The notes under the pieces were generated by a model. That model made no database searches. It worked only from the letters and a program-made list of their open reading frames with translations, and had not been told where the DNA came from. A stretch of 64,000 nt of DNA from the IMG/VR virus record IMGVR_UViG_3300026292_000003, positions 62,001 through 126,000 of that record. One strand, given 5' to 3'. Of the stretch, positions 7,948 to 34,378 are shown piece after piece (the first letter of the stretch is position 1; each line of letters begins with the position of its first letter). Both the position numbers and the translations under genes were made by a program.

Positions 7948-9810
7948 ATGGCACAAAGAAAATTTATAATTGACGGTGGTTTTAAAACTGATGACGCCTC
8001 AGAATTACTAGCCAATTTAACAATGGGTGGTTCAATCCTACCTAATGTTGATTCGGATGGTACAACTGGTTACGACTTAGGTTCGACTACTGCTAAATGG
8101 AAAGATTTATACCTTTCTCAAGGATCACTTTACATTAATAACCAAAAAGTAATCCATGATGATTCAGGTACAATCGTTTTCAAAGCAGATATGGACCAAG
8201 GCTTAACTGTTAAAACTGAGGGCACAGGAGTAATTACCCTGCAATCAACACAAACAGTAAATGTCGCTGGTACACTACAAATTACAGACGGCAAAAACAT
8301 CACTTCAAGTGGTGGAACTTCAGTTGGTTTTGGTGACAAAATTGATATGGGTTCAAATAAGATCATCAACGTTCCTAATCCAACGGATAACGGTGATGCG
8401 GCTAACAAAACTTACGTGGACTTACAGGTTGCAAACGTAATCAACGGTGCACCAGGTGCGTTAGACACACTTAACGAATTAGCAAATGCTTTAGGCGATG
8501 ATGCTAACTTCTCAACTACAGTAACAAACTCAATTGCGGCTAACGCATCTGATATTGTTGCTCTACAAACTACTTCAAGTAATAATGCGACAGCTATAGC
8601 AACAGCACAAACAGATATTGTTGCTAATACAACAGCTATTACAGCTGAAGCAGTAACAGCAAGAGCAAATGAACAAGCAAATACTGCGGCAATCAATGCT
8701 CTAGATTCTGCATACCAAACAGCTGATGCAACAATTAATTCAGCAGTAGCTTTAAAAGCAAACAAAACTTATGTTGATACACAAGACACAGCATTAGATA
8801 CATCTTTAAAAGCATACGCAGACTCAGCTGAAACAGATGCAGTAGCTACAGCTCAGTCATACACAGACGGCAGAGAAGCGGCAATCACAACTGCTTACAC
8901 AGCGGCGATTGCATCTTCAGCGTCATCAAGTGGTTCAACTGCTAACAGTTACACAGACACAGAAATTGCAACAGCAACTACAGCTATTACTTCAGCATAC
9001 CAAACTTATGCTGATACAGCTGAAACAGATGCAGTAGCAACAGCGGCGGCAGATGCAACTACTAAAGCAGATGCGGCACGTGCAGGTGCAGTAGCAGATG
9101 TTAAAGCCTCTGATTTAGATATGGGCGGAAACAAAGTTCTTTTCGGTAACGTTTATTCAACAGACGGCGATCTACCAAGTGCGGGTACATACCACGGTAT
9201 GTTTGCTCACGTACACACTGGCGGAAAAGCTGTTATGGCACATGACGGTAACTGGGTAGAACTAGCTAAAACATCAGACCTTACAACTGCGGTTAACAAC
9301 CTTGTTGACTCAGCACCAGGTGCTCTAGATACATTAAATGAACTAGCGGCGGCTATGGGTGATGATGCTAACTTTAGTACAACAATGACTAACAATTTAG
9401 CAGGCAAAGCGTCAACTGGTACTTCAATTACAGCAGGTAATGGATTATCAGGCGGTGGTGACTTTAGTACAGACAGAACAATATCTATGTCTGGTAACTT
9501 TACTGGTGACTTTACAGCAACTGGTGATATTACTGCTTACTCAGATGAAAGTTTAAAAACTAACATCCAAGTAATTGATGGTGCATTAGGTAAAGTAGAG
9601 AACATTAGTGGTTATACTTGGAATAGAATTGCAGATGATTCAAGAGCAACAGGTGTTGTTGCCCAAGAATTAGAAGCAGTACTTCCAGAAGCAGTACACA
9701 CTGATGCTGATGGTTTAAAATCAGTAGCATACGGTAACATTACAGGTCTACTAATTGAAGCGGTTAAAGAATTATCAGCTCAAGTAGCAGAACTTAAAGC
9801 TAACAAGTAA
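7948..9810 (+). CDS. Tail fibre protein with C-terminal peptidase S74 intramolecular chaperone
   Basis: C-terminus AYSDESLKTNI...GVVAQELEAVLPEAV...VAYGNITGLLIEAVKEL is the typical S74/ICD signature; APGALDTLNELA motifs. Confidence 0.9.
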   Translation: MAQRKFIIDGGFKTDDASELLANLTMGGSILPNVDSDGTTGYDLGSTTAKWKDLYLSQGSLYINNQKVIHDDSGTIVFKADMDQGLTVKTEGTGVITLQSTQTVNVAGTLQITDGKNITSSGGTSVGFGDKIDMGSNKIINVPNPTDNGDAANKTYVDLQVANVINGAPGALDTLNELANALGDDANFSTTVTNSIAANASDIVALQTTSSNNATAIATAQTDIVANTTAITAEAVTARANEQANTAAINALDSAYQTADATINSAVALKANKTYVDTQDTALDTSLKAYADSAETDAVATAQSYTDGREAAITTAYTAAIASSASSSGSTANSYTDTEIATATTAITSAYQTYADTAETDAVATAAADATTKADAARAGAVADVKASDLDMGGNKVLFGNVYSTDGDLPSAGTYHGMFAHVHTGGKAVMAHDGNWVELAKTSDLTTAVNNLVDSAPGALDTLNELAAAMGDDANFSTTMTNNLAGKASTGTSITAGNGLSGGGDFSTDRTISMSGNFTGDFTATGDITAYSDESLKTNIQVIDGALGKVENISGYTWNRIADDSRATGVVAQELEAVLPEAVHTDADGLKSVAYGNITGLLIEAVKELSAQVAELKANK

Positions 9811-10633: not shown

Positions 10634-12397
10634 ATGGCATTTAAAATTGGAAACAAAATAGTATTACATGACGCAGATCCTTCTGCAACACTATTAACAG
10701 AAAGTAACTTAGATAGGTTACAAATTAATGGTGTAGATGTATTAACGCATGACGGTACTACAGTTACATTAAAAAATGTAGATATTAATGACGCATTAGA
10801 GAGTACAATAAACACAGACAATCTTACAGAAGGAACTACAAATTTATTTTTTACAGATGCTAGAGCAGTATCAGCATTATCAGGTTTAGCAACAACAGTC
10901 AGTAATAATACTACAGCAATTAATAATAATGCTACAGCAATTTCAAATAATGCAACAGCAATCGCAAACAATGCCACAGCAATTACAAATAATGCTACAG
11001 CTATTACAAATAATGAAACAGCAATTAATAATAATGTTACAGCAATCGCAAACACACTAGTAGATGCAAAAGCATATACAGATACTAGAGAAACTGCAAT
11101 TACTACAGCATATACAGCGGCTATAGCGTCATCTACGTCAAGTGGTAGTACAGCGGCAAACGCATATACAGATGCAGAAATTGCTACAGCTACAGCAAGT
11201 ATAACATCAGCATATCAAACAGCTGATGCAACAACTTTATCTTCAGCTCAAACTTATGCGGATACAGCAGAAGCAGATGCAGTAACTACAGCTAACGCAT
11301 ATACAGATGCCAGAGAAGTCGCAATCACTACAGCATATCAAACTTATACAGATACAGCAGAAGCAGATGCAAAAGCATATGCAGATACACAAATTGCAAA
11401 TTTAGTTGATTCTGCACCAACTACATTAGACACACTAAATGAATTAGCGTCAGCACTAGGTGACGATGCTAACTTCTCAACTACAGTAACAAATTCAATA
11501 GCAACTAAACTTCCACTAGCTGGTGGAACAATGGCAGGAGATCTTACATTAAGTGGAGCTCCAACAAATAATCTTCATGCGGCTACTAAAGCATATGTTG
11601 ATTCAGCAGTAACTGGTGGAACAGGTGCATTAGATACAGACGATATTGCAGAAGGAACAACTAATTTATACTATACAGATGCTAGAGCAGATGCTAGAGC
11701 AACCTTAAGAATTAATGCGGCGACAACAGACAATATAGATGAAGGTAGTACTAATTTATATTATACAAATACTAGAGCAAGAACAGAAATAGAAGGTGCA
11801 GATTTAGATTTAGGTACAAACAAAATATTATATTCTAATGTTTATGCTACAACTGGTGATTTACCAAGTGCAACAAGTTATCATGGAATGTTTGCTCATG
11901 TACACGGCACAGGCAAAGGATATTTTGCTCATGCAAATAACTGGGTAGAACTAGCAAATCAAAGTGATATTCCAACAAACAATAATCAATTGACTAATGG
12001 TGCAGGTTATGTTACAACTGATACAAATACAACATATACAGCAGGTAACGGATTATCATTAGTTGGCACAGAATTTTTAATGAGTGGTAGTTACACAGGT
12101 GACTTTACAGCAACAGGTGATGTTACAGCATACTCAGATAAAAGATTAAAAAGAAATATTGAAACTATTAATAATGCAGTAGATACTGTAAGCAAATTAC
12201 GTGGTGTAAATTTTGAAAAAGATGGTAGACATAGCACTGGTGTAATAGCACAAGAAGTAGAAGAAGTTTTACCTCAAGTAGTACATACAGCTCCAGATGG
12301 TATGAAATCAGTAGCATATGGTAATATTGTAGGACTATTAATTGAGGCTATTAAAGAACAACAAAAAGAGATAGAGGAGTTAAAAAAGAAAATATAA
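10634..12397 (+). CDS. Second tail fibre protein with C-terminal peptidase S74 chaperone
   Basis: AYSDKRLKRNI...GVIAQEVEEVLPQVV...VAYGNIVGLLIEAIKE; late promoter CATAAATAG at 10608. Confidence 0.9.
   Translation: MAFKIGNKIVLHDADPSATLLTESNLDRLQINGVDVLTHDGTTVTLKNVDINDALESTINTDNLTEGTTNLFFTDARAVSALSGLATTVSNNTTAINNNATAISNNATAIANNATAITNNATAITNNETAINNNVTAIANTLVDAKAYTDTRETAITTAYTAAIASSTSSGSTAANAYTDAEIATATASITSAYQTADATTLSSAQTYADTAEADAVTTANAYTDAREVAITTAYQTYTDTAEADAKAYADTQIANLVDSAPTTLDTLNELASALGDDANFSTTVTNSIATKLPLAGGTMAGDLTLSGAPTNNLHAATKAYVDSAVTGGTGALDTDDIAEGTTNLYYTDARADARATLRINAATTDNIDEGSTNLYYTNTRARTEIEGADLDLGTNKILYSNVYATTGDLPSATSYHGMFAHVHGTGKGYFAHANNWVELANQSDIPTNNNQLTNGAGYVTTDTNTTYTAGNGLSLVGTEFLMSGSYTGDFTATGDVTAYSDKRLKRNIETINNAVDTVSKLRGVNFEKDGRHSTGVIAQEVEEVLPQVVHTAPDGMKSVAYGNIVGLLIEAIKEQQKEIEELKKKI
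10904..11050 (+). repeat. Seven degenerate 21-nt tandem repeats encoding NNxTAIx heptads
   Basis: AATAATGCTACAGCAATT-NNN-type units read directly from the sequence. Confidence 0.9.
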
Positions 12398-12412: not shown

Positions 12413-12817
12413 ATGAAAGTAAGCGATAATACACAGATATCAATGCCAATCCGTAATATGATTGCGATCATAGGAGCAATTTGTATGGGAGTTTGGGCTT
12501 ACTTTGGAATAACTGAAAAGTTAAATCAACATAGCAATACACTTACATTAATGCAAAAAGACCTAGAGTCAAATACTGAATTTCGTATTAAGTATCCACG
12601 TGGAGAATTAGGACAAAGTCAGAATGATTTAGAGCAGTTTATGTTAATAGAAGAATTATATAAAAGTGTTGAAAAAATGGAAAAAGTATTAGAATCAAAT
12701 ATGACTAACAAAGTTAACATTGACTTTTTAAAAGAACAAGTAGATAAAATGTTAAATGATATTGAGAAGTTAAAAGACAAGCAACGTGAGTTTGCTAACG
12801 GTAACGGAGGTCACTAA
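12413..12817 (+). CDS. Hypothetical membrane-anchored coiled-coil protein
   Basis: N-terminal TM segment (MIAIIGAICMGVWAYFGI) then coiled coil; late promoter CATAAATA at 12399. Confidence 0.6.
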   Translation: MKVSDNTQISMPIRNMIAIIGAICMGVWAYFGITEKLNQHSNTLTLMQKDLESNTEFRIKYPRGELGQSQNDLEQFMLIEELYKSVEKMEKVLESNMTNKVNIDFLKEQVDKMLNDIEKLKDKQREFANGNGGH

Positions 12818-13029
12818 TGGTAGAAACAGTAGTAGCCCTATTAATGCTTATAAACAACGAAATTAAAGAGCACAGAATACAAGAATCTATGGGTGTATGT
12901 TTAAGAGGTAAACGTACAGCAGAAAGACAATATTCAGAAGGTGTAAAATACCAATGCATCAAATCTAAAGCAAAACTTGAGTTAAACATAGATGGAACTA
13001 AAACAATTAAAGCTCTTATATTAGAATAA
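12817..13029 (+). CDS. Small hypothetical protein (two Cys), coupled to the previous gene
   Basis: TAATG overlap, GGAGG RBS. Confidence 0.6.
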   Translation: MVETVVALLMLINNEIKEHRIQESMGVCLRGKRTAERQYSEGVKYQCIKSKAKLELNIDGTKTIKALILE

Positions 13030-13131
13030 AGAGATTATAAACTACTATATAACACGAGCTATATAGATAAATAATAATACAAGCAATATGCTTGTAATTA
13101 ACGTTAATTACAATTATGACAGGAGAGTAAT

Positions 13132-13320
13132 ATGTCGACATTACCAGCAACCGGTTCAAATATTTCTATGTCAACTGTGCGTAACTATTTTGGATTAAGT
13201 GGAACAGTTTCCATGAGTACATTAGGTAGCACAATCTCACCGTCAGTGACGTCTAATATCAAACTTTCAGCTACATTTGGTGGTTGGCAGTATCCGTCAC
13301 CGTCTGGTTCACATCCATAA
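13132..13320 (+). CDS. 62-aa Ser/Thr-rich protein, probable fibre-tip cap (gp38-attachment-domain-like)
   Basis: Own late promoter (GATAAATA 13066) and AGGAGA RBS; M.TLP..G..ISMS.V start resembles small proteins that follow S74 fibres. Confidence 0.6.
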   Translation: MSTLPATGSNISMSTVRNYFGLSGTVSMSTLGSTISPSVTSNIKLSATFGGWQYPSPSGSHP

Positions 13321-13361
13321 GAAATATTGTAAAACATATTTAATAGGTACGTTGTTTATAC

Positions 13362-13396
13362 TTGACAACGTGCCTATTGTAATGTAAAATAAATAC
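13362..13396 (+). promoter_or_regulatory. Overlapping sigma70-like (TTGACA-N17-TAAAAT) and late (AATAAATAC) promoters
   Basis: Both motifs read directly; the -35 box lies in hairpin 13342-13378. Confidence 0.7.
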
Positions 13397-13455
13397 ACTT
13401 GTAAAAATTATTATTGTGACCAATAGTAAAAGTAAACTCAACACAGGAGAAAACA

Positions 13456-13875
13456 ATGATTAGAACTCGTTATGAGATTGAAACGTTTGTACTTGGAGCA
13501 CACCCGTCTCCAGCCAGAAAGGCACAAGTACTTACAGAAGAGCTAATGAAAGCTCGTGAAACAAAACACCCAGACCTTCCAATATTAGAAGCAATTTATA
13601 AAGATTTTTCTGCAGAACATAATGTAGAAGAACTTTCAAAAGATATTGAATCTACTGAAGAAGAATATTGGGTACACAGACTAGCAAAACTAGCGGCAAT
13701 TGATATTTTAACAATTGGTAAAGTACAACCAGAGCATATGGCTTATATGGTTGCGTTACCAGATGAAGCTTTCAAAGCATCAGTTAAAGAAGCCACAAGT
13801 ATTGCTAAACAACTAAATTATGAGGTTCAACAAATTGAAGCTGAACTTCAAGCAGATTTAGCATCTGCAAAATAA
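13456..13875 (+). CDS. Hypothetical helical protein, possible fibre assembly factor
   Basis: AGGAGA RBS; no motif recognised; role inferred from position only. Confidence 0.55.
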   Translation: MIRTRYEIETFVLGAHPSPARKAQVLTEELMKARETKHPDLPILEAIYKDFSAEHNVEELSKDIESTEEEYWVHRLAKLAAIDILTIGKVQPEHMAYMVALPDEAFKASVKEATSIAKQLNYEVQQIEAELQADLASAK

Positions 13876-13880
13876 ACTGA

Positions 13881-14531
13881 ATGGTAACCACTCCATCATT
13901 TTATCATAAAAAGAATAATTCCGCTTCTGTAGCTATTTGCGTTCCTGTGCGAGATAATGTTACTGCGGTCTTTGCTTACAGTCTTGCTATGCTTCAACGA
14001 AAGTGTGGTGAGGCTGGGTTAGCTACTTCTCTACATTTTATTATGGGTAGTGAAGTTACTATACAAAGACAACAGTTAGTATCTGAAGCACTAGAAACAA
14101 ATTGTACTCACATTATGTGGATTGATTCTGATATGCAATTTCCAGTAGATACCCTAAATATATTATTAGCGGCAGATAAAGATATTGTTGCTGGAAATTA
14201 TTCAACAAGAGTTCCACCACATAGACCAGTCGCTTTTAGAAGTAAAAATAATCTAGATGATAGAGTTTTTACTGGTACAGGCTTAGAAAAAGTTTGGGCT
14301 GTAGGAAGTGGAATGATGTTAGTAAAAAGAGAAGTTTATGAAAAGTTAAATTCACCTTTTTATAAAATTGAATATTCAGAAGACTATTCAAGTTTAGTAG
14401 GAGAAGACGTATATTTTTGTACAAAAGCTAACGAAGCAGGATATGAAGTATATGTAAGTCACGAACTGAGTGACAAAATAGCACACATAGGAACACGTGC
14501 ATTTACAGTTAAAGGCGATTGCAATGATTAA
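13881..14531 (+). CDS. GT-A fold (family 2-like) glycosyltransferase
   Basis: VAICVP start, WIDSDM DxD motif, G.GMMLVKREV, GEDVYFC, HIG. Confidence 0.85.
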   Translation: MVTTPSFYHKKNNSASVAICVPVRDNVTAVFAYSLAMLQRKCGEAGLATSLHFIMGSEVTIQRQQLVSEALETNCTHIMWIDSDMQFPVDTLNILLAADKDIVAGNYSTRVPPHRPVAFRSKNNLDDRVFTGTGLEKVWAVGSGMMLVKREVYEKLNSPFYKIEYSEDYSSLVGEDVYFCTKANEAGYEVYVSHELSDKIAHIGTRAFTVKGDCND

Positions 14532-15615
14532 TATAAAGAATAACCAAAAAGAATTTAAAGGACAAAACGTTGTCACACCTTGGGATAGACTTAAAAGGTT
14601 TATGTTTGATAGTTACCCAATTATTAAAACCCCAATAAGATTAAAAGACGAAGAAGATATTTTAGATATAGCAAAAAAATATAAAAACGAAGCAGATATG
14701 GCTTGGGTTGTATTTGATGAAATAGAAGTTAATCCAAAATTTCCTTGGCATTATAGACCAAGTGATATAGGTAAAAAGGTTATTCATACGTTTCCTAGAG
14801 TAGTTAAAAGAACAAACAGACCAGTGAGCTGGGGGGATGTTAGATTAGTTCCTACTAACGGAGTTTCCCACGGTGAGGTAGAAAATAAATTGGTAGCAAG
14901 TTTCCACGTTGCAGAATTTGATATCTTTATGATTAGTTACCACGAAGCTGAAGCAGATGAGAATTTTCAAAAATTAAAAAACAGATTTAAAGATGCACAA
15001 CACGTAAAGAACGTTGAAGGTATTGGTAATGCTCACAAACGTGTGGGTGAATTAGCAAAAACTGAAATGGTTTATATTGTTGATGCAGATGCAGATATTA
15101 TGGGTGACTTTAGTTTTGATTATATTCCACCAATGAGTAAAAGAAAAAATACAACATATGTATGGAGTGCTAGAAATCCTGTAAATGGATTAGAGTACGG
15201 GTATGGTGGAGTTAAGTTATTTCCAAAAGTTCAGTTATTAGAACTAGGACATGAATTGCCAGATTATACAACTGGTGCAAGTTTTTATCAGCCAATATCA
15301 GATGTATCAAATATTACAAGATTTAACAAAGACCCTTATAGAACTTGGAGAAGTGCATTTCGTGAATGTGTTAAACTAGCAAGTTCAGTTAATCCTAATC
15401 AAAAACAAAAAGAGACAGATGAAAGATTAGAAGCATGGTGTACAAAAGATGTTGGAGCCCGTTTTGGTCGTTACTGTTTAAAAGGTGCCTTAGAAGGCAA
15501 AGAGTATGGATTAGCAAACAAAGATAATAACGAAGCATTAGTTAAAATTAACGACTTTGAATGGTTACGTGAACAATTTGTTGCTAGTATGAAAAAGAGA
15601 GTCACTGACAAGTAA
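14524..15615 (+). CDS. Glycosyltransferase-like protein
   Basis: IVDADA DxD motif, GIGNAH, YGYGGVKLFP, WRSAFRECVKL; start placed at ATG 14524 overlapping the upstream gene. Confidence 0.6.
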   Translation: MINIKNNQKEFKGQNVVTPWDRLKRFMFDSYPIIKTPIRLKDEEDILDIAKKYKNEADMAWVVFDEIEVNPKFPWHYRPSDIGKKVIHTFPRVVKRTNRPVSWGDVRLVPTNGVSHGEVENKLVASFHVAEFDIFMISYHEAEADENFQKLKNRFKDAQHVKNVEGIGNAHKRVGELAKTEMVYIVDADADIMGDFSFDYIPPMSKRKNTTYVWSARNPVNGLEYGYGGVKLFPKVQLLELGHELPDYTTGASFYQPISDVSNITRFNKDPYRTWRSAFRECVKLASSVNPNQKQKETDERLEAWCTKDVGARFGRYCLKGALEGKEYGLANKDNNEALVKINDFEWLREQFVASMKKRVTDK

Positions 15616-15909
15616 ATGATTCAATGGTTAAAGAAATCAATTCATCATTTAAAAGTAGAAACAGGATGGGGCTACTTTTATCATTTATGGCATAGCCTTT
15701 GCAATAGCTGGGCTTTAATTGTTATAGCATTTAAAAGTGTAGTACACGGATTATTTCCTTGGATATGGAAAGCAGATGCACCTAAAGGGGTTATTCGTAT
15801 GTATCATCAAATTATGAGAATTGAACATATAGAAAAGATGGACAAGTTAAGAAAGTTACCAAAAGATGAACGATATAAATCCAATAAACCTATTGACCCT
15901 ATTGAATAG
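15616..15909 (+). CDS. Small membrane protein, DUF6356-like
   Basis: HL......YFYHL...VHGLFPWIW pattern. Confidence 0.55.
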   Translation: MIQWLKKSIHHLKVETGWGYFYHLWHSLCNSWALIVIAFKSVVHGLFPWIWKADAPKGVIRMYHQIMRIEHIEKMDKLRKLPKDERYKSNKPIDPIE

Positions 15910-16453
15910 TTATGGCGACGTAATAGAACTGAACCAAAAGCTAGACAGTAATAAGATTATTAATGAATTAGAAAGTTTACAATGGGAAAAAGGCCCTAAT
16001 GGTAAACAAGGCATTAATCTTACAGGACCAACAACAGGTCTTGGACTTGAAGATAAAAATAAACACGATAAAGATCAAGAAGCAAATGAAAATTTACTTA
16101 AATGTCCATCATTATATGAATTCTTTAAACAATGGTCAGACTTGGCTAGATGTAGAGCAGTAAAACTAGAAGCTGGTAGCTTCTTTACTATGCATCGAGA
16201 CGCATTTAGATTTAACCCTCAAATTAGAATTTTTATTCCATTAAATAAAACTGAAATACACCAATGGAACTTTTTATACGACGATAAACGTGTAGAGTTT
16301 AAACCAGGTGTTCCTTATGTATTAAATACTCGTAAGCAACACGGAAGTTTTGCAATGGATAGTGGAATATATCATATATTAATGAGTTTATATTTAACTG
16401 AAAATAATTTAAAAACAATTATACAATCATTACCAAACTGTAAGGAAAGATAA
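15866..16453 (+). CDS. 2OG-Fe(II) oxygenase (Asp/Asn beta-hydroxylase-like)
   Basis: HRD...RIFIPL...LNTRKQH (HxD...H triad). Confidence 0.8.
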   Translation: MNDINPINLLTLLNSYGDVIELNQKLDSNKIINELESLQWEKGPNGKQGINLTGPTTGLGLEDKNKHDKDQEANENLLKCPSLYEFFKQWSDLARCRAVKLEAGSFFTMHRDAFRFNPQIRIFIPLNKTEIHQWNFLYDDKRVEFKPGVPYVLNTRKQHGSFAMDSGIYHILMSLYLTENNLKTIIQSLPNCKER

Positions 16454-17403
16454 TGAAAGAAAAAACAGACAAAAATTATCATAGTGGCGAAAAGATTGAA
16501 GATTTATATAAAAATGTAAAAGATGCAGATCATAAAAAAGTAGAAGGTAATACACAAAAAGATAGTAACTACGAAGATGAAATGTATAGTGAAGAGCAAA
16601 TAGCTAGACACAATAAAATGGATAACATCTTTAAAGTTGATAATGTTCCAAGTAGATGGGAACACAATAAAACTCGTAGTACTTTTCATTTTGATCCTTT
16701 TGGTGATCCAACTGAACAAACATTTATTATTACAAATAGATTTGTAGGAGATTTTGAACCTGCGGTTAAGTATGCAATAGCAAATGCTAAAGAACAAACT
16801 ATAGGAAATTATAGGCCACGTAATTTAAGTAAACAAGATAAAGATTTACACGATGGAGAAATACAAGATATTATAACGGCATCAGGTAAAGATGATCTTA
16901 GTGCAATGTATCACGATTCAGTAATAAGAAGAAAAGTTGATGAAGACGGGAATTACAAAGTACAAGAAAATAGAATACCTGAATATGAGGTGTTGTTTAA
17001 TATGATAGATACATTAGGTGTAGAGGTTCATCAATCAAGATTACATATACAAAAGTTAGGACAAGTAACACCAGCACATATTGATCAGCAGATGAGATAT
17101 GCTAGGCCAGGTTGGCGTAAAATATGGACTGAAGCAGGAGCAGATAAGAATCCTTTAAAGTTAAGAAGGTTTTTAGTTATGTTGCAAGATTGGGATTACG
17201 GTCACGTATGGCAATTTGGTAACACTTATTATCAAGGATACAAAGCAGGTGAGTGTATAACATACGATTGGTGTAATATGCCACACGGTACGGCTAACTT
17301 TGGATATACTCCAAGAGTTACATTTCAGTTTACAGGATTTATAAGTGAAAAAACGCAAGAGTATATAAACAATCCAGATAAAAATAGAATCATTGAAGTA
17401 TGA
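16453..17403 (+). CDS. 2OG-Fe(II) oxygenase-like protein
   Basis: Q.TPAHID...DWDYGH...PHGTANFGYTPRVT (HxD...H...R). Confidence 0.75.
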   Translation: MKEKTDKNYHSGEKIEDLYKNVKDADHKKVEGNTQKDSNYEDEMYSEEQIARHNKMDNIFKVDNVPSRWEHNKTRSTFHFDPFGDPTEQTFIITNRFVGDFEPAVKYAIANAKEQTIGNYRPRNLSKQDKDLHDGEIQDIITASGKDDLSAMYHDSVIRRKVDEDGNYKVQENRIPEYEVLFNMIDTLGVEVHQSRLHIQKLGQVTPAHIDQQMRYARPGWRKIWTEAGADKNPLKLRRFLVMLQDWDYGHVWQFGNTYYQGYKAGECITYDWCNMPHGTANFGYTPRVTFQFTGFISEKTQEYINNPDKNRIIEV

Positions 17404-18209
17404 CAATAAAACGACCATTTACAACTATGACAGAAAAAGAAAAGTTAGAATGGACTTTTCGAGAAAAAATAGTAAAACAAAAAAGACAACCAAATACTAC
17501 AGTAGAAGAGTATGGGCATGATAAAGGTGGTAGATTTATTGTAGGAAAAACAGGAGCAGATGCTTGGACAGATGATGCAGTACAAAACATAGACTGGACT
17601 TTACCAGAAAATCAATTTAATTATACGTGGAATAAAAATGGTTATAGAGGACCAGATGATAATGGAGATGTAGATATTATTTTTGCTGGTAGTAGTTTAA
17701 CAATAGGAACAGGTGTTCCTTATGAAAAAAGTTATCCACACCTCGTCTCAGAAGAACTTAATCTTAAACATATTAATATAAGTGATTTTGATACACTATT
17801 AGATTTAGCAGATAGTTTACTTGACTTTAATCATTTAAATCCAAAGTATATTATATTAGGTGATTGCTGGGCAATTAATAGTACTAGTTGGTTAATGAGA
17901 TTTTGGTTAAAGAAAGAAAAAGATTTAGAAACAATAGATTTGGTAAGAAAGACTTTTTATGATAGCAATACCAAAGTATTTAAAATATTTGAGTTAGCAT
18001 TAAAGGAAGCATTTCCAAATGCAAAATGTTTTATATTTGAACCAGAAGAAAAAAGAAAGTTATGGTCATATGGACATGAGTTACAACATATTAAATCAGT
18101 AAAATATAAAAAGAGTGATATTATTGATCTAGGAAGAGATCAAACTCACCCTGGTCCAAAAACGCATAGAATATTTGCTGATAAAGTAAAGAGTTTAATT
18201 AATGAATAA
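17400..18209 (+). CDS. SGNH/GDSL hydrolase-like protein (esterase/acyltransferase)
   Basis: FAGSSLTIGTG block I; RDQTHPG DxxH block V. Confidence 0.7.
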   Translation: MTIKRPFTTMTEKEKLEWTFREKIVKQKRQPNTTVEEYGHDKGGRFIVGKTGADAWTDDAVQNIDWTLPENQFNYTWNKNGYRGPDDNGDVDIIFAGSSLTIGTGVPYEKSYPHLVSEELNLKHINISDFDTLLDLADSLLDFNHLNPKYIILGDCWAINSTSWLMRFWLKKEKDLETIDLVRKTFYDSNTKVFKIFELALKEAFPNAKCFIFEPEEKRKLWSYGHELQHIKSVKYKKSDIIDLGRDQTHPGPKTHRIFADKVKSLINE

Positions 18210-18984
18210 TAATGGTGAAGATTTAATATTGGCTATGGGAGCTCCAGGTTCAAGATGGAGTGGAGCAATACGTATACTATCTTTGATGTATGAAAATATT
18301 AATACATCGGATAACAATGACGAATGGAACTACGAAAAGTCTGTAAGTTATAACAAATATTTACAAGCTACTAGGCTTGAAGATAGACGTGAAGAACCAA
18401 ATAGACAAATTAAAGTTGGCTGGCATCGTGGTGCATATTGGGGTCCAGGAAATCCAGCAGGTGATAAATTTGATGTATTAGATACACTAACTAAAGAAGA
18501 GATAATAGAAGAATTTAAAAAGCCTTTTACTAATTGGGAACCAGGAATTAAAATAATTAAGAGTCACTGGTTCAGTTATCATATTCCTTTATTAAGAGAA
18601 TTATTTCCAAAAGCTATACTGTGGTCATTTCATGATACTGATAAGATTTGCCAAGACTGGTGGCATACTGTTGGCGGTTGGGAAATTTCCTATCCTAATT
18701 ATGATTGGTATAAAGATGACGAAACTATGCTTAAACAAATAGGCATAGAAAATAATAATATAAAAGATAATTTTAATTTAAAAAGATATACTACTTGGAA
18801 AGAAGCAGTTAAAGAGTTAGGCTTTCCTGTAGACATAAGAACGCCAGCAGAAATAATAGATATGGAACCAAAATTTATAGATTCTTTTAAACCGTCAATG
18901 TATAGTAATTCAGAAAACTTTAATAAGTTCTTAGATTCAGTTTTTAGCAGAAAAGAAATGGGTATTATTAACCCAACTTTGTAG
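18202..18984 (+). CDS. Sulfotransferase-like P-loop protein
   Basis: LILAMGAPGSRWS loop and IIKSHWF motif resemble PAPS-binding sulfotransferase folds, but are divergent. Confidence 0.45.
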   Translation: MNNNGEDLILAMGAPGSRWSGAIRILSLMYENINTSDNNDEWNYEKSVSYNKYLQATRLEDRREEPNRQIKVGWHRGAYWGPGNPAGDKFDVLDTLTKEEIIEEFKKPFTNWEPGIKIIKSHWFSYHIPLLRELFPKAILWSFHDTDKICQDWWHTVGGWEISYPNYDWYKDDETMLKQIGIENNNIKDNFNLKRYTTWKEAVKELGFPVDIRTPAEIIDMEPKFIDSFKPSMYSNSENFNKFLDSVFSRKEMGIINPTL

Positions 18985-19402
18985 AGTGTTGCTCGTATAC
19001 AGTTCTTACTTTTTTAATAAACTGTTTTGAGTTACATTGTATTTTAGCACCTGGGTGTAATGGTCTTGGCCAATTACCTATTTTAACCCAACAATAACCA
19101 TCACTTTCATTATTTAATATAGGAATAAATTCTTCATCTATAGTAACAACAAAGCTATGGTATATAAATTTTTTATTAGGACTTGTAAATTTATTAATAG
19201 GAATAACTTTTTTAATATCAGGAACTAATCCTAGTTCCTCTTCAATTTCTCTATACAATGTATCAATTGGTTTTTCGTTATTATCCGATTTGCCTCCGAA
19301 GAAGCCCCACGTTCTAGGGTGATTAACTTCACCACTTCTGTGTTGTAACATAACTCTTCCGGTATCAGTGCTAAGAAATATACATCCTGCGGCTGTTATC
19401 AT
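18968..19402 (-). CDS. NUDIX hydrolase
   Basis: Nudix box GGKSDNNEKPIDTLYREIEEELG; start at ATG 19402 (MITAAGCIF). Confidence 0.9.
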   Translation of the reverse strand: MITAAGCIFLSTDTGRVMLQHRSGEVNHPRTWGFFGGKSDNNEKPIDTLYREIEEELGLVPDIKKVIPINKFTSPNKKFIYHSFVVTIDEEFIPILNNESDGYCWVKIGNWPRPLHPGAKIQCNSKQFIKKVRTVYEQHSTKLG

Positions 19403-19479
19403 ATGTGTCCTATCCAATGTGTGCAATCGTCGTGTGGGTCATCGCATTCACTACAAGTAGAGTCTCCAGTATCCTGCAT
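19399..19479 (-). CDS. Putative 26-aa Cys/His micropeptide (MQDTGDSTCSECDDPHDDCTHWIGHI)
   Basis: AAGGA upstream; overlaps the gp15 end; ATGA-coupled to NUDIX. Confidence 0.45.
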   Translation of the reverse strand: MQDTGDSTCSECDDPHDDCTHWIGHI

Positions 19480-21900: not shown

Positions 21901-21940
21901 TATTTATGCCTTTTGATACTAATATGATTATGGATAAATA
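21901..21940. promoter_or_regulatory. Divergent pair of late promoters
   Basis: TATTTATG (minus-strand CATAAATA) at 21901 and GATAAATA at 21933. Confidence 0.7.
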
Positions 21941-21972
21941 TTATATACTCACATAATATAAGGAATCACAAT

Positions 21973-22941
21973 ATGTTTAGATTTTATACAGAAAGAAAAT
22001 GGGCGTTATGGGCTTGGTTAGGTTCAGCAATCATTTTATCATCTTTATGGGTTCAAGTAAAAATTGACGTTAAAATCAATGAATGGTTTGGTCAGTTTTA
22101 CGATATGATCCAAAAAGCACTGGCTACACCTAATGCAATTACCATAGGTGAATACTGGGCCAGTTTATTATCTTTTATTACACTAGCAGGAATATATGTA
22201 GCACTAGCAGTAGCAATAAGTTTCTTTACAGCTCACTTCTTGTTTAGATGGAGAACTGCAATGGTAGAATGGTATCATGCAGTTTATGATAGAGCAAGAA
22301 AAATAGAAGGAGCGGCACAAAGGGTACAAGAAGATACTATAAAATTCTCTAGAATAATGGAATCACTTGGTACAAGTTTAATTGAATCAATTATGGTTCT
22401 TGTGCAGTTTGTTCCAATCTTGTTAGGACTATCAATAGGTATACCAATATTCTTTTTTGGTGATTGGCAATATGGATTAGTTACGGGTGCTATTATTTGG
22501 TCCGTAGGTGGTACATTATTTTTAATTGCATTAGGTTGGTTACTAAGATTAGTTGGCGTTGAATATGACTTGCAAAAGAAAGAAGCCGCTTATCGTAAAA
22601 TACTTGTTATAGCAGAAGATGACGATAACGTCAGACCTAAAACAATAAATGAGTTATTTGATGATGTTAGGAAAATTCATTTCTTATCATATATTAAATA
22701 TCTTTATTTTAATATTGGTCGTATTGCTTATTTACAAGCAAACGTTTTAAGTGCCTACGTATTTCTTGCACCAGCCATTGTAGCAGGCGTTGTTACATTA
22801 GGTGTGATGCAACAAATAATTAGAGCATTTGGTCGTGTAGAAGGAAGTATGCAATACTTACTTAAAGCATGGCCTACAATTATTGAATTAATGAGTGTAT
22901 ATAGACGTTTAAGAGAGTTTGAAAAACAGATTACTAAATAA
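21973..22941 (+). CDS. sbmA: SbmA/BacA-family peptide transporter (TM domain only)
   Basis: INEWFGQFYDMIQKAL, FRWRTAM, IEGAAQRVQEDT, EAAYRKILV, W.TIIELMSVYRRL. Confidence 0.9.
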   Translation: MFRFYTERKWALWAWLGSAIILSSLWVQVKIDVKINEWFGQFYDMIQKALATPNAITIGEYWASLLSFITLAGIYVALAVAISFFTAHFLFRWRTAMVEWYHAVYDRARKIEGAAQRVQEDTIKFSRIMESLGTSLIESIMVLVQFVPILLGLSIGIPIFFFGDWQYGLVTGAIIWSVGGTLFLIALGWLLRLVGVEYDLQKKEAAYRKILVIAEDDDNVRPKTINELFDDVRKIHFLSYIKYLYFNIGRIAYLQANVLSAYVFLAPAIVAGVVTLGVMQQIIRAFGRVEGSMQYLLKAWPTIIELMSVYRRLREFEKQITK

Positions 22942-22958
22942 TCATAGAGGAGAGATTT

Positions 22959-23453
22959 ATGAAATCAGTTCAATTACAAGTAGCTTCAGACCATAGAGGT
23001 ATGGAGTTAAAAGATCAATTATCAAATTGGTTAACACCTGTTGACGAAGATGTACCTACTAAATTTGGTATAGATTTATTTCACGATATAGGAATTTACG
23101 ATGATAAGAAAAAAGTAGACTATCCTCGAATAGTACAAATGTTCTGTAAGGATATATCTACTCCTGATAAAGTAACTGCAGGTTGGACAGTATACAATAA
23201 AGGAATACTTATTTGTGGATCTGGCTATGGAGTTTCTATAGCGGCCAACAGGCATCCATATGTTAGAGCAGTAGTTTGTAGAACTGCTAAAGAAGCAGAG
23301 ATGTCACGTAAACACAATGATGCTAATGTACTATGTTTAGGTGCTGACTTTACATCATTAAACCAAGCAAAGAAAATATGCGAAGCATTTTTTACTACTG
23401 ACTTTGAAGGTGGAAGACACTTGAAAAGAATAAAAAGTATAAGCACATACTAA
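22959..23453 (+). CDS. rpiB: Ribose-5-phosphate isomerase B (RpiB/LacAB)
   Basis: ASDHRG, VDYP, GILICGSGYGVSIAAN, SRKHNDANVLCLG, FEGGRH..R. Confidence 0.93.
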   Translation: MKSVQLQVASDHRGMELKDQLSNWLTPVDEDVPTKFGIDLFHDIGIYDDKKKVDYPRIVQMFCKDISTPDKVTAGWTVYNKGILICGSGYGVSIAANRHPYVRAVVCRTAKEAEMSRKHNDANVLCLGADFTSLNQAKKICEAFFTTDFEGGRHLKRIKSISTY

Positions 23454-23454
23454 T

Positions 23455-23826
23455 ATGATATTAATATTATTAACAACTTTTTTATTATGGGCTATATTAG
23501 TTTATATAACTTATTCTGCAACCGGGTTAACACGTGTACGAGAAGTGTACACAATGTGGTTCGATAAACAATATTGGAAAAAAAGATATAATGTTGTTGA
23601 AGCACTAGCCTGGAGCGGAAAGTTATTAGTTATATTGCCTGCTATATTCTTTGGGTATGAAGTATGGTGGGCTCATATAATTACACTAGCAACATCTGCT
23701 CTTTTAATATGGGTTAGTGAACAAAAACTATTACCTACTCTTTTAGCATTTAATACATTATGGATAGGTATAAGTTCATATATATTAGTTAGATACTTTT
23801 ATACAAATTATTGGATGATACAATGA
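23455..23826 (+). CDS. Hypothetical multi-pass membrane protein
   Basis: About four hydrophobic segments. Confidence 0.65.
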   Translation: MILILLTTFLLWAILVYITYSATGLTRVREVYTMWFDKQYWKKRYNVVEALAWSGKLLVILPAIFFGYEVWWAHIITLATSALLIWVSEQKLLPTLLAFNTLWIGISSYILVRYFYTNYWMIQ

Positions 23827-34236: not shown

Positions 34237-34378
34237 AAAGGGCTACTATTTTTTAATAGTAGCCTTTTTCTATTTGTAACTATTCGATAAATACTATGCT
34301 ACTATATCGATATAGCAAATACTATCGTGTAAAGATTATGCGATTTTAAATCTTGAAATTTAAGGAGTACTCAAATGG
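34237..34378 (+). repeat. Cassette element copy 1: terminator + late promoter + structured leader + RBS
   Basis: GGGCTACTATT..AATAGTAGCCTTTTTC, TTCGATAAATACTA and TAAGGAGTACTCAAATGG are shared with 35007-35144. Confidence 0.85.

What the first reader, a model, noticed from the sequence alone, without database searches (positions are those of the whole stretch)
13066..18984. Candidate virion-decoration pathway: tiny Ser/Thr-rich fibre-cap protein followed by a tailoring-enzyme operon
Seen: directly after two S74 fibres is a 62-aa protein with 23 Ser+Thr and no acidic residues. It is followed by tightly coupled genes for two DxD glycosyltransferase-like proteins, two HxD..H 2OG-Fe(II) oxygenases, an SGNH-like enzyme and a sulfotransferase-like enzyme, behind a late promoter. 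Known: these families glycosylate, hydroxylate, (de)acylate and sulfate substrates. Inference: the block builds a modified glycan or other post-translational modification on fibres or the small protein (virion glycocalyx, receptor mimicry or shielding), or matures the peptide in RiPP fashion, rather than modifying DNA.
Basis: partly seen in the sequence, partly recalled or inferred. Interest (0 to 1): 0.85.

Follow-up and report, generated by a model that had tools for sequence, protein, structure and literature searches.

The report
Two enzyme cassettes beside phage fibres
Next to the tail-fibre genes of an uncultured marine jumbo phage lie a tiny fibre-anchor-like protein, a conserved pair of sugar-adding enzymes and a separately inserted, mobile set of hydroxylating, acyl-handling and sulfating enzymes; they may decorate the virus particle, but nothing here shows what they modify.

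Summary
The block is not one late operon. The late-type motif at 13066 serves only the 62-aa gene. A covarying terminator hairpin follows that gene. The enzymes then start from a conserved sigma-70-type promoter.

Synteny across about 140 related loci splits the block into two cassettes:
- **Cassette A** (62-aa gene, g139 and two glycosyltransferases) is lineage-core. It always sits between the S74 fibres and the neck genes.
- **Cassette B** (DUF6356, two oxygenases, SGNH, sulfotransferase) is an insertion found only in the window's subclade. It recurs in unrelated marine phages with halogenases, APS kinase and radical-SAM arrays, without the 62-aa gene.

The 62-aa protein is the free-standing form of an N-terminal module. 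In sister lineages this module heads 165-680-aa receptor-binding-type proteins at the same position. It is therefore a fibre part, not a RiPP precursor.

Virion glycan or protein decoration is the best reading, at about 0.35. Modification of host envelope glycan, small-molecule tailoring and DNA hypermodification are not excluded. I rate it a new variant of known kinds, of moderate interest.

The parts
7948..9810 (+). context: tail fibre A with C-terminal S74 intramolecular chaperone
   Evidence: Pfam PF13884, E 4e-13
10634..12397 (+). context: tail fibre B with C-terminal S74 intramolecular chaperone
   Evidence: Pfam PF13884, E 2e-13
13066..13073 (+). late-type promoter motif GATAAATA, 66 nt before the 62-aa gene
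   Evidence: 12 copies in the window against 6.4 expected, mostly just upstream of structural genes. An xATAAATAx late-type motif lies within 120 nt upstream of the gene in 26 of 31 relatives (in most of them GATAAATA at -48 to -66).
13132..13320 (+). s62: 62-aa Ser/Thr-rich protein, a free-standing copy of an N-terminal module of fibre or receptor-binding proteins
   Evidence: Composition. Residues 1-53 are nearly invariant in relatives. The same module sits at the N-terminus of 165-680-aa proteins with PD40, F5/8-C or lectin-like C-termini. In sister lineages it occupies the same syntenic slot.
13345..13375 (+). 13-bp stem, 5-nt loop hairpin: terminator of the s62 transcript; its 3' arm carries the -35 box of the next promoter
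   Evidence: RNAalifold finds 13 pairs, 6 with compensatory changes in 7 relatives
13362..13390 (+). sigma-70-type promoter TTGACA-17-TAAAAT of the enzyme operon
   Evidence: Matches 11 of 12 consensus positions. Kept in 24 of 34 distinct relatives while the spacer diverges. The same promoter type precedes helicase and primase genes in the window.
13389..13396 (+). ATAAATAC late-type motif overlapping the -10 box; at this position only in the window and its two closest relatives
13456..13875 (+). g139: helical protein of unknown function, always first in cassette A
   Evidence: phrog_1409. Syntenic in all relatives, down to 29-33% identity. No PDB relative.
13881..14531 (+). GT216: GT-A glycosyltransferase, Anp1/Mnn9 (GT62)-like
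   Evidence: Pfam Anp1 hit in 9 of 10 family members, best 1e-10. The family profile hits Mnn9 (3zf8) at E 1.5e-5 and the STIV protein A197. D82, D84, E175, D176 and H202 are invariant.
14524..15615 (+). g363: virus-specific GT-A glycosyltransferase-like protein (N-terminal beta domain plus GT-A plus helical C-terminus)
   Evidence: AF2 pLDDT 84.6. The top 44 PDB hits at E<=1e-3 are nearly all GT-A enzymes: SunS, RmlT, K4CP, LH3, ppGalNAc-T. BFVD hits are GT-A enzymes, including a Che8 glycosyltransferase. D187xD189 is invariant. More than 4000 homologues exist.
15616..15909 (+). g97: DUF6356 small protein with one hydrophobic segment and four conserved His; first gene of cassette B
   Evidence: Pfam PF19883, 31.4 bits, above the cutoff. 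Always immediately 5' of the g195 homologue.
15866..16453 (+). g195: 2OG-Fe(II) oxygenase of the Asp/Asn-beta-hydroxylase / proline-hydroxylase type
   Evidence: H110, D112 and H159 are invariant. PF05118 is hit by 2 paralogous members. hhalign gives 83% to the window's own PF05118 protein. Weak PDB hits to 4p7w, 1e5r and 7v4f align the motifs.
16453..17403 (+). g316: 2OG-Fe(II) oxygenase (DSBH fold), virus-specific family
   Evidence: AF2 pLDDT 89, pTM 0.89. Foldseek top hits are L-proline cis-4-hydroxylase, AspH and proline 3-hydroxylase. H209, D211, H278 and R288 are invariant. Only 4 MAG contigs among 185,579 species genomes carry a relative.
17400..18209 (+). g269: SGNH/GDSL-like hydrolase or acyltransferase
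   Evidence: Atlas look-alikes are SGNH/GDSL and AlgX-like, score 0.96, TM 0.63-0.77 through the nearest viral cluster. S99, N126 and D247-x-x-H250 are conserved in 28 homologues.
18202..18984 (+). g260: sulfotransferase-like P-loop protein
   Evidence: Atlas look-alikes are Sulfotransfer_3/_1 clusters. The G13-x-P15-G16-S17-x-W19 loop is invariant. An APS kinase is encoded in related islands.
18968..19426 (-). context: NUDIX hydrolase, convergent, first gene of the neck operon; in most relatives it directly abuts g363
   Evidence: Pfam PF00293; synteny

Best explanation
The region is a mosaic of three units in an uncultured marine jumbo myovirus (IMG/VR UViG_3300026292_000003).

(1) s62 is a monocistronic late gene: late-type motif, strong ribosome-binding site, then a terminator hairpin. 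It encodes the stand-alone form of a roughly 55-aa N-terminal module. In sister lineages this module is the head of full-length receptor-binding or fibre proteins at the same genome position. s62 is most likely a small virion or fibre-attachment component.

(2) Cassette A is g139 plus two GT-A glycosyltransferases. It is transcribed from its own sigma-70-type promoter, so presumably before the late genes. It is a core part of the fibre-neck region of the whole lineage.

(3) Cassette B is DUF6356, two amino-acid/peptidyl-type 2OG hydroxylases, an SGNH enzyme and a sulfotransferase-like enzyme. It is an accessory cassette inserted between cassette A and the neck genes in one subclade, and it moves horizontally among marine phages.

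Inferred mechanism: the pre-made cytoplasmic enzymes of cassette A build a short glycan on a phage-specific acceptor, most likely the adjacent fibre or s62-module proteins as they are made late. Where cassette B is present, it adds hydroxyl, O-acyl (or removes acyl) and sulfate groups to the same protein or glycan.

The architecture, the folds and the synteny are shown. The acceptor and the chemistry are inferred.
For: Architecture:
- Promoter, terminator and coupling.
- Late-type motifs precede fibre, sheath and terminase genes; sigma-70-type promoters precede helicase and primase genes.

Two cassettes:
- About 35 relatives carry s62-g139-GT216-g363 directly followed by NUDIX and the gp15-like gene, with no cassette B.
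- Cassette B recurs in at least 12 unrelated contexts without s62, g139 or GT216.

s62 as a fibre module.

Linkage of s62 and the glycosyltransferases:
- It survives to about 33-40% identity of neighbouring genes.
- It survives a rearrangement in which the s62-like domain is fused to a 194-aa ORF downstream of g363.

Folds and motifs.

Virus-only families point to a virus-specific substrate.

An APS kinase in related islands supports real sulfation.

Literature:
- Iyer et al. 2010 (PMC2938197) predicted beta-hydroxylase + sulfotransferase + PAPS-synthetase operons acting on co-encoded tail-collar or collagen-like proteins.
- Freeman et al. 2023, as cited in PMC12619734, showed glycans on mycobacteriophage capsid and tail tube.

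Metatranscriptome contigs cover 13.3-16.1 kb.
Against: - There is no direct evidence that any virion protein is modified.
- The enzyme operon is not co-regulated with the late structural genes.
- Adjacency to fibres could merely reflect a plastic genome region or conserved collinearity within one lineage.
- Cassette B elsewhere sits next to fibre-like genes in only 2 of 4 annotated contexts.
- g363-family proteins in other phage lineages lie among radical-SAM arrays, a carbamoyltransferase, ThyX and a QueC-like gene. That setting would also suit DNA hypermodification or metabolite tailoring.
- GT216 relatives are common in cyanophages, where the literature usually assigns such genes to host cell-surface or DNA modification (PMC12801897).
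- The RNA-library contigs may contain carried-over DNA.
Confidence: 0.4

Rival explanations
1. Host-envelope remodelling. The early-expressed soluble glycosyltransferases, and in some strains the acyl and sulfate tailoring enzymes, act on lipid-linked LPS or capsule precursors of the infected cell. This would mask or alter the receptor that the neighbouring fibres recognise, giving superinfection exclusion or preventing progeny from sticking to debris.
For: - A sigma-70-type promoter suggests expression before the structural genes.
- The combination of GT-A, O-acyl and sulfate enzymes is classic polysaccharide tailoring; this is general knowledge, with rhizobial Nod-factor tailoring as an example.
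- SGNH look-alikes include AlgX-type polysaccharide O-acetyltransferases.
- RmlT, K4CP and WrtF are among the fold hits.
- Cyanophage glycosyltransferases are usually read this way (PMC12801897).
- DUF6356 has a hydrophobic segment.
Against: - All the families are virus-specific, with almost no cellular homologues. That is unusual for enzymes acting in a host pathway.
- No flippase, polymerase, Gtr-type membrane partner or signal peptide is present in the block.
- The oxygenases resemble amino-acid or peptidyl hydroxylases, not sugar-modifying enzymes.
Confidence: 0.2
2. Metabolite or peptide tailoring island. Cassette B (possibly with the window's halogenase, SbmA-like transporter and other oxygenases) modifies a small molecule or a free amino acid or peptide during infection. 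It lies beside the fibres only because that region tolerates insertions.
For: - In other phages cassette B sits with Trp-halogenase-like enzymes between its genes, and with AMP-binding, class IV aminotransferase, TctA, APS kinase and radical-SAM/SPASM genes.
- The best structural match of g316 is a free-L-proline hydroxylase.
- Iyer et al. 2010 interpreted cyanophage dioxygenase and halogenase arrays as secondary-metabolite genes (PMC2938197).
- The window has an SbmA/BacA-like importer and a halogenase nearby.
Against: - This does not explain cassette A's deep linkage to the fibre and s62 genes.
- No scaffold-forming enzyme (NRPS, PKS or precursor peptide) was found in the window.
- The gene content of the islands varies greatly, so co-location may not mean one pathway.
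Confidence: 0.15
3. DNA hypermodification. The glycosyltransferases, and perhaps the oxygenases, modify bases in phage DNA to evade restriction, as T4 glucosyltransferases and TET-plus-glycosyltransferase systems do.
For: - Early-type promoter.
- The families are virus-specific.
- g363-family genes elsewhere lie next to ThyX, a QueC-like gene and radical-SAM arrays.
- AlkB appears among the weaker fold hits of g316.
- The literature describes diverse phage DNA glycosyltransferases (Pyle 2024, cited in PMC12619734).
Against: - No hydroxymethylase, TET/JBP-type oxygenase, DpdA or base-kinase was found in the 64-kb window.
- The oxygenases group with amino-acid or peptidyl hydroxylases.
- No sulfated or SGNH-processed DNA base is known (own knowledge).
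- Cassette A sits inside the structural module, next to fibre genes, in every lineage seen.
Confidence: 0.12
4. RiPP-type maturation. s62 is a precursor peptide that the enzymes tailor into a bioactive peptide.
For: - Small size and Ser/Thr richness.
- The top PDB fold hit of g363 is the glycocin S-glycosyltransferase SunS.
- SPASM radical-SAM enzymes occur in related islands.
Against: - The s62 sequence is the N-terminal domain of long receptor-binding-type proteins in the same genomic slot.
- Conservation is uniform over residues 1-53, with no leader/core pattern.
- s62 has its own late promoter and terminator.
- There is no protease, exporter or recognition element.
- Five of the eight enzyme-block genes are never linked to it elsewhere.
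- The SunS match has TM about 0.3 and is only fold-level.
Confidence: 0.03

Closest known systems
Predicted beta-hydroxylase + sulfotransferase + PAPS-synthetase operons with tail-collar or collagen-like substrates, and cyanophage dioxygenase/halogenase arrays (Iyer, Abhiman, de Souza, Aravind 2010, PMC2938197)
   Same: - AspH/proline-hydroxylase-type 2OG oxygenases sit next to a P-loop sulfotransferase.
- An APS kinase is present in related islands.
- Halogenases lie in the same islands.
- Phage fibre-type proteins are encoded next door.
- That paper proposed hydroxylation followed by sulfation of the fibre-like protein.
   Different: - That work is a comparative-genomic prediction, mostly in bacteria, and was never tested.
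- Here the cassette is carried by a phage and its families are virus-specific.
- Here it comes with an SGNH enzyme and DUF6356, and it is plugged in beside a glycosyltransferase pair.
- A tail-collar domain was not shown in the window's fibres.
Mycobacteriophage virion glycosylation (Che8-type glycosyltransferases; Freeman et al. 2023, known here through citations in PMC12619734 and PMC12801897)
   Same: - Phage-encoded soluble GT-A glycosyltransferases.
- A Che8 glycosyltransferase is among the fold matches of g363.
- The proposed acceptor is a virion protein.
   Different: - Only fold-level similarity.
- A different host type (marine, unknown) and different genome position.
- No hydroxylase, SGNH or sulfotransferase partners are described there.
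- Modification is not demonstrated here.
Cytoplasmic hydroxylation-then-glycosylation of proteins: Mimivirus L230 (lysyl hydroxylase plus glucosyltransferase on collagen-like proteins), the Skp1 prolyl-hydroxylase/GT pathway, chlorovirus capsid glycosylation
   Same: - A 2OG hydroxylase plus GT-A enzymes acting in the cytoplasm on a virus or cell protein.
- LH3 and procollagen galactosyltransferase appear among the weak matches.
   Different: - In this lineage the glycosyltransferases exist without the hydroxylases in most genomes, so glycosylation cannot depend on prior hydroxylation.
- No collagen-like repeats were seen.
T4 alpha/beta-glucosyltransferases and TET-linked DNA glycosyltransferases
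   Same: Phage glycosyltransferases expressed from an early-type promoter.
   Different: - The T4 enzymes are GT-B fold (own knowledge).
- No hmC or hmU pathway was found in the window.
- The oxygenases here are not TET/JBP-like.

Membership tests
GT-A glycosyltransferase (GT216, Anp1/Mnn9-like) | DxD metal/nucleotide-sugar motif conserved | tested here: met
   D82 and D84 are invariant in 43 homologues down to 32% identity; E175, D176 and H202 are also invariant.
GT-A glycosyltransferase (GT216, Anp1/Mnn9-like) | Significant match to a curated family model or a solved member | tested here: inconclusive
   The window protein scores 23.9 bits against Anp1, below the 28.8 cutoff. However, 9 of 10 relatives hit Anp1 (best 1e-10), and the family profile hits Mnn9 (3zf8) at E 1.5e-5.
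GT-A glycosyltransferase (g363) | GT-A Rossmann-like fold | tested here: met
   AF2 pLDDT 84.6. The 44 PDB hits at E<=1e-3 are nearly all GT-A enzymes, although TM is only about 0.3 because of extra domains. BFVD hits are GT-A enzymes.
GT-A glycosyltransferase (g363) | DxD motif conserved; curated model hit | tested here: inconclusive
   D187-x-D189 is invariant in 20 sequences. The window protein has no Pfam hit. A tandem-domain relative hits PF13641 at 27.4 bits against a cutoff of 27.
2OG-Fe(II) oxygenase (g316) | DSBH fold with HxD...H iron triad and a 2OG-binding basic residue | tested here: met
   pLDDT 89. The top hits are proline hydroxylases and AspH. H209, D211, H278 and R288 are invariant in 21 sequences, including paralogues at 25% identity. 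There is no Pfam hit.
2OG-Fe(II) oxygenase, Asp_Arg_Hydrox type (g195) | HxD...H triad; relation to PF05118 | tested here: inconclusive
   H110, D112 and H159 are invariant. PF05118 is hit by 2 of 19 members (2.5e-5). hhalign gives 83% probability, E 9.5e-6, to the window's PF05118 protein.
SGNH/GDSL hydrolase (g269) | Block I Ser, block III Asn, block V DxxH conserved | tested here: met
   S99 (in GSS), N126 and D247-x-x-H250 are at least 95% conserved in 28 homologues down to 27% identity. There is no Pfam hit. Fold support is only indirect, through the Atlas model of a neighbouring cluster.
PAPS-dependent sulfotransferase (g260) | 5'-phosphosulfate-binding P-loop | tested here: met
   G13-x-P15-G16-S17-x-W19 is invariant in 26-37 homologues.
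PAPS-dependent sulfotransferase (g260) | 3'-phosphate-binding Arg...Ser motif and a curated model hit | tested here: inconclusive
   No invariant Arg/Ser pair was found in the expected segment. There is no Pfam or PDB sequence hit. The Atlas places it next to Sulfotransfer_3 clusters (score 0.95-0.96; TM 0.55-0.61 through a neighbour's model).
RiPP system (s62 as precursor) | Precursor with leader and variable core, dedicated recognition, protease or export genes | tested here: not met
   Residues 1-53 are uniformly conserved. The same sequence is the N-terminal domain of 165-680-aa proteins. No such accessory genes are present.
Phage virion glycosylation system | Glycan shown on virion proteins and dependent on the phage glycosyltransferases | not testable with these tools
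   The phage is uncultured. Only synteny with fibre genes is available.
Phage DNA glycosylation system | Pathway making hydroxymethyl-pyrimidine or another acceptor base, plus a glycosyltransferase acting on DNA | tested here: inconclusive
   No hydroxymethylase or TET/JBP gene lies among the annotated genes of the 64-kb window. The other roughly 158 kb of the contig was not examined.
T4-type late promoter | TATAAATA about 10 nt before the transcript start of late genes | tested here: inconclusive
   Exact TATAAATA occurs 3 times in the window, below chance, and not in the region. The variant (G/A)ATAAATA(C) is enriched about 2-fold and placed before structural genes. Transcript starts were not mapped.

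The most novel reading that the evidence does not exclude
Marine jumbo phages carry a virus-only, horizontally exchangeable 'hydroxylate, acylate, sulfate' cassette that plugs in behind a conserved fibre-proximal glycosylation cassette. Some strains would then display sulfated, O-acylated glycoprotein fibres. This would be the first sulfated phage virion, with the small s62 module as the glycosylated adaptor. It would be a tunable surface chemistry for sticking to, or avoiding, sulfated marine polysaccharides.
Probability: 0.12. Interest if true: 0.8.

Novelty: new variant of a known kind. Interest (0 to 1): 0.5.

Why it matters
If the enzymes decorate the virion, this would extend phage particle glycosylation from mycobacteriophages to abundant marine jumbo phages. 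It would also add hydroxylation and sulfation, chemistries so far only predicted for fibre-like proteins.

Independently of the substrate, three results are useful:
1. Large virus-only enzyme families now have fold-level assignments: more than 4000 g363 homologues, and the g316, g260 and g269 families.
2. A mobile cassette, DUF6356-oxygenase-oxygenase-SGNH-sulfotransferase, is defined. It can be traced across ocean viromes.
3. A roughly 55-aa N-terminal module of marine phage receptor-binding proteins is defined, with a free-standing form.

The work also corrects an attractive but over-unified reading of the locus.

Tried and rejected
- **Direct family scans.** Pfam, NCBIfam, PHROGs and PADLOC scans of the window proteins gave almost nothing.
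- **PDB searches.** Single-sequence and profile searches were uninformative for g260, g316, g139 and g363.
- **Cultured phages.** They hold no close relative of the block: blastn found only the NUDIX gene. tblastn found one weak hit each for g316, g363 and g195, and two for g260. The Ralstonia phage RsoM2USA neighbourhood is all 'hypothetical'.
- **Paralogy of the two oxygenases.** hhalign shows that g195 and g316 are not detectably related to each other, so they are not a recent duplication.
- **Cellular relatives.** The genome-collection scan for g316 gave only 4 MAG contigs. The word-based search for DUF6356 relatives found only close viral copies. No bacterial context could therefore be used.
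- **Other negative checks.** There is no Rfam family and no tRNA in the region. The canonical T4 late motif is absent.
- **s62 tail against cassette B.** I looked for a link between the C-terminal tail of s62 and the presence or absence of cassette B and found none.
- **'Moraphage' paper.** The jumbo-phage paper PMC12619734 was checked as a possible description of this lineage. It only discusses glycosyltransferases in general.
- **Metatranscriptomes.** Run contigs show that the region is present in RNA libraries, but they are contigs without strand or end information and cannot exclude DNA carry-over.

Full report
**Source and setting.** The window is part of IMG/VR contig UViG_3300026292_000003, 221.6 kb, from a marine metagenome. 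It is about 33% GC. Its neck and tail proteins resemble those of jumbo myoviruses such as PA5oct, Atu_ph07 and the RaK2/GAP32 group at about 35-38% identity. No cultured phage shares the block. Against 50,697 phage records, blastn matched only the NUDIX gene.

**Checking the observation.**
- The ORF map shows two fibres with C-terminal S74 chaperone domains: 7948-9810 and 10634-12397 (Pfam E about 1e-13). Between them lies a 229-aa ORF.
- Two small ORFs follow, 12413-12817 and 12817-13029. They are absent from relatives.
- The 62-aa ORF follows at 13132-13320.
- From 13456 to 18984, eight ORFs follow with gaps of 0-5 nt or overlaps. These are g139, GT216, g363 (gene callers use the ATG at 14524), g97, g195, g316, g269 and g260.
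- A NUDIX gene converges on the last one. It begins the minus-strand neck operon, which includes a T4 gp15-like gene.

**Enzyme identities.** Direct Pfam, NCBIfam and PHROG scans were nearly blank. I therefore built family alignments from related loci and used profiles, models and motifs.
- **GT216.** Nine of 10 relatives hit Pfam Anp1 (best 1e-10). The family profile hits yeast Mnn9 at E 1.5e-5 and the STIV protein A197. D82-x-D84 and E175-D176 are invariant down to 32% identity.
- **g363.** This family has more than 4000 members and is virus-only. Its AF2 model (pLDDT 84.6) matches GT-A enzymes almost exclusively: SunS, RmlT, chondroitin polymerase, LH3, ppGalNAc-T and, in BFVD, a Che8 glycosyltransferase. 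D187-x-D189 is invariant. Relatives of about 530 aa are tandem duplications of this domain, and one copy scrapes past the PF13641 threshold.
- **g316.** The AF2 model (pLDDT 89, pTM 0.89) is a double-stranded beta-helix (DSBH) fold. Its nearest structures are L-proline cis-4-hydroxylase, AspH and proline 3-hydroxylase. H209, D211, H278 and R288 are invariant, including in 25%-identical paralogues.
- **g195.** It has an invariant HxD..H. Its paralogues hit PF05118. The family aligns at 83% probability with the window's own Asp_Arg_Hydrox protein. It is not detectably related to g316.
- **g269.** Conserved residues are Ser99, Asn126 and D247-x-x-H250. Its Atlas look-alikes are SGNH/AlgX-like.
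- **g260.** It has an invariant GxPGSxW loop and Sulfotransfer_3 look-alikes. I found no conserved 3'-phosphate motif, so membership is only partly shown.
- **g97.** It is a DUF6356 protein, the only hit in the block above a Pfam cutoff.

**Transcription signals.**
- The exact T4 motif TATAAATA is rare in the window and absent from the region.
- A variant, (G/A)ATAAATA(C), is about 2-fold enriched. It lies 25-70 nt before fibre, neck, sheath, terminase and other structural genes.
- The finding's start coordinate, 13066, is one such motif, 66 nt before s62. A late-type ATAAATA motif is kept within 120 nt upstream of s62 in 26 of 31 relatives.
- After s62 comes a 13-bp hairpin (13345-13375). Six of its pairs show compensatory changes in relatives.
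- The hairpin's 3' arm is the -35 box of a TTGACA-17-TAAAAT promoter, which matches 11 of 12 consensus positions. This promoter is retained in 24 of 34 distinct relatives while the spacer diverges.
- The same promoter type precedes the helicase, primase and other non-structural genes of the window.
- An ATAAATAC overlapping the -10 box exists at this position only in the window and its two nearest relatives.

I infer that s62 is a monocistronic late gene. The enzyme operon is a separate unit, probably transcribed earlier by host polymerase. Timing is an inference; no transcript ends were mapped. Contigs from four marine RNA libraries cover 13.3-16.1 kb, but they cannot exclude DNA carry-over.

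**Synteny splits the block.**
- Loci fetched with g316 (45 loci) showed that the window's close clade keeps the whole block.
- More distant marine phages share only g97-g195-g316-g269-g260. These often come with extra paralogues of the oxygenases and sulfotransferases, and with a Trp-halogenase-like gene inserted between g195 and g316.
- Those islands also hold APS kinase, TctA, AMP-binding, class IV aminotransferase, radical-SAM/SPASM, pentapeptide and another Asp_Arg_Hydrox gene.
- An s62 profile found nothing in those islands.
- Loci fetched with g363 (80 loci) gave the converse. About 35 relatives have fibres, s62, g139, GT216 and g363, then directly NUDIX and the gp15-like gene on the minus strand. 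None of the five other genes is present.

So cassette A (s62, g139, two glycosyltransferases) is lineage-core. Cassette B is an insertion in one subclade and a mobile module among marine phages. The g316 family is almost absent from 185,579 cellular species genomes; only four MAG contigs carry a relative.

**What s62 is.**
- A profile search of 1.84 billion representative proteins found 36 clusters. Most are 54-70-aa stand-alone proteins. Several are 165-680-aa proteins that begin with the same roughly 55 residues (consensus start MALPATG, then a conserved LS-x-TFGG block). They continue into PD40-like, F5/8 type C or lectin-like regions.
- Two of these long proteins lie in sister lineages whose gp15-like gene is about 34% identical. 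They occupy exactly the s62 slot: giant S74 fibre, then the s62-headed 520-679-aa protein, then homologues of g139 and GT216, then a multi-copy g363 protein, then NUDIX, the gp15-like gene and g356.
- In another lineage the s62-like segment is fused to the C-terminus of a 194-aa ORF downstream of g363, still inside the cassette.
- s62 is as conserved as its neighbours or more so; in locus L123 it is 51% identical against 32-45% for them.

I conclude that s62 is the free-standing N-terminal (attachment-type) module of a fibre or receptor-binding protein family. This makes it a likely virion part and makes a RiPP precursor unlikely. Its Ser/Thr richness is a property of the module (about 28-37%). 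The lack of acidic residues is not conserved: some relatives have Asp or Glu.

**Mechanism.** Shown here are the folds, the catalytic motifs, the unit boundaries, the two-cassette history and the persistent s62-glycosyltransferase adjacency. The substrate is inferred.

I favour decoration of phage proteins, meaning the fibres or s62-module proteins, with a glycan. Where cassette B is present, hydroxyl, acyl and sulfate groups would be added. The reasons are:
- cassette A is embedded in the fibre-neck module in every lineage, and its adjacency to s62 survives a rearrangement;
- all the families are virus-specific, which argues for a virus-specific acceptor;
- the oxygenases resemble amino-acid or peptidyl hydroxylases;
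- APS kinase in related islands argues for real sulfation;
- Iyer et al. 2010 (PMC2938197) predicted exactly such hydroxylase-sulfotransferase systems acting on co-encoded tail-collar or collagen-like proteins;
- phage virion glycosylation is established in mycobacteriophages (Freeman 2023, cited in PMC12619734).

Against this reading:
- there is no co-regulation with the late genes;
- fibre neighbourhoods are plastic regions;
- cassette B is next to fibre-like genes in only two of four annotated foreign contexts;
- g363 relatives elsewhere sit among radical-SAM arrays, a carbamoyltransferase, ThyX and a QueC-like gene, which would also suit DNA or metabolite chemistry.

My probabilities are: virion decoration about 0.35 (0.4 for the whole best explanation, including the well-supported architecture), host envelope glycan modification 0.2, metabolite or peptide tailoring 0.15, DNA hypermodification 0.12, and RiPP 0.03. 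The remainder is for something not considered.

**Comparison with known systems, and novelty.** The nearest described things are the Iyer/Aravind predictions and mycobacteriophage virion glycosylation. Mimivirus L230, the Skp1 pathway and chlorovirus capsid glycosylation are functional analogies recalled from my own knowledge. New here are:
- the fold-level assignment of several large virus-only families;
- the definition of a mobile five-gene cassette;
- the deep linkage of a glycosyltransferase pair to a fibre-head module and its 62-aa stand-alone form.

I rate this a new variant of known kinds. Interest is moderate (0.5). It gives a testable handle on what abundant ocean phages sulfate and glycosylate, but the headline claim (a single virion-decoration pathway maturing a tiny cap protein) is only partly borne out.

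Noticed in passing
window 21933-25031: A GATAAATA motif precedes an operon that encodes a full-length SbmA/BacA-like peptide importer (Pfam E 1e-138), an RpiB ribose-5-phosphate isomerase, a 123-aa ORF and a Trp-halogenase-like flavoenzyme. The halogenase family lies between the g195 and g316 homologues in other phages.
   Followed up: partly
window 30902-31684 and 34375-34989: An Asp_Arg_Hydrox (PF05118) oxygenase sits immediately before the tail-sheath gene (31787-34216), and a g195-family paralogue sits immediately after it. Oxygenases are therefore scattered through the structural module.
   Followed up: partly
window, intergenic regions (for example 2880, 7889, 27035, 31721, 34287, 35057, 35558, 40189, 41782, 54172): The motif (G/A)ATAAATAC recurs before structural genes. 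TTGACA-17-TAnAAT recurs before replication genes (for example 49491 and 55004). These look like a two-class promoter system.
   Followed up: partly
window 13345-13375: A hairpin with six covarying pairs carries the -35 hexamer of the downstream promoter in its 3' arm. Terminator and promoter overlap, which could couple read-through to promoter use.
   Followed up: partly
window 12413-13029: Two ORFs lie between fibre B and s62 only in this strain: 134 aa with an N-terminal hydrophobic segment and a coiled coil, and 70 aa. Relatives go straight from the fibre to s62.
   Followed up: no
window 13141-13155 (s62 residues 4-8): The invariant N-terminal LPATG resembles a sortase LPXTG signal, but at the wrong end of the protein. 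This is probably a coincidence and remains unexplained.
   Followed up: no
L145 1-22763 and L146 1-20972: In other phage lineages, g363-family glycosyltransferases (up to 920 aa, tandem domains) lie beside arrays of four to six radical-SAM/SPASM genes, a carbamoyltransferase, APS kinase, NifU/Fe-S genes, ThyX and a QueC-like gene.
   Followed up: partly
L049 3784-7280: A cassette-B-type island in a 206-kb phage contig also carries APS kinase, a TctA tricarboxylate-transporter subunit and DUF2061. Nearby are AMP-binding and class IV aminotransferase genes and an Mtd_N fibre.
   Followed up: no
L138-L141: The only 'cellular' genomes with g316 relatives are four MAG contigs labelled Planctomycetota, Pacearchaeota, Haliscomenobacter and Chloroflexi. 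L140 also has a g260 homologue next to it. These are probably mis-binned viral contigs.
   Followed up: no
window 37109-37555: An ORF with a Tn7 TnsA-like N-terminal endonuclease domain lies inside the structural region.
   Followed up: no
window 13300-16150: Contigs from four marine metatranscriptome runs cover g139 to g195. One run matches at 99% or more; the others match relatives at 90-95%, and their coverage stops near 15.6 kb, where cassette B is inserted in the window.
   Followed up: partly
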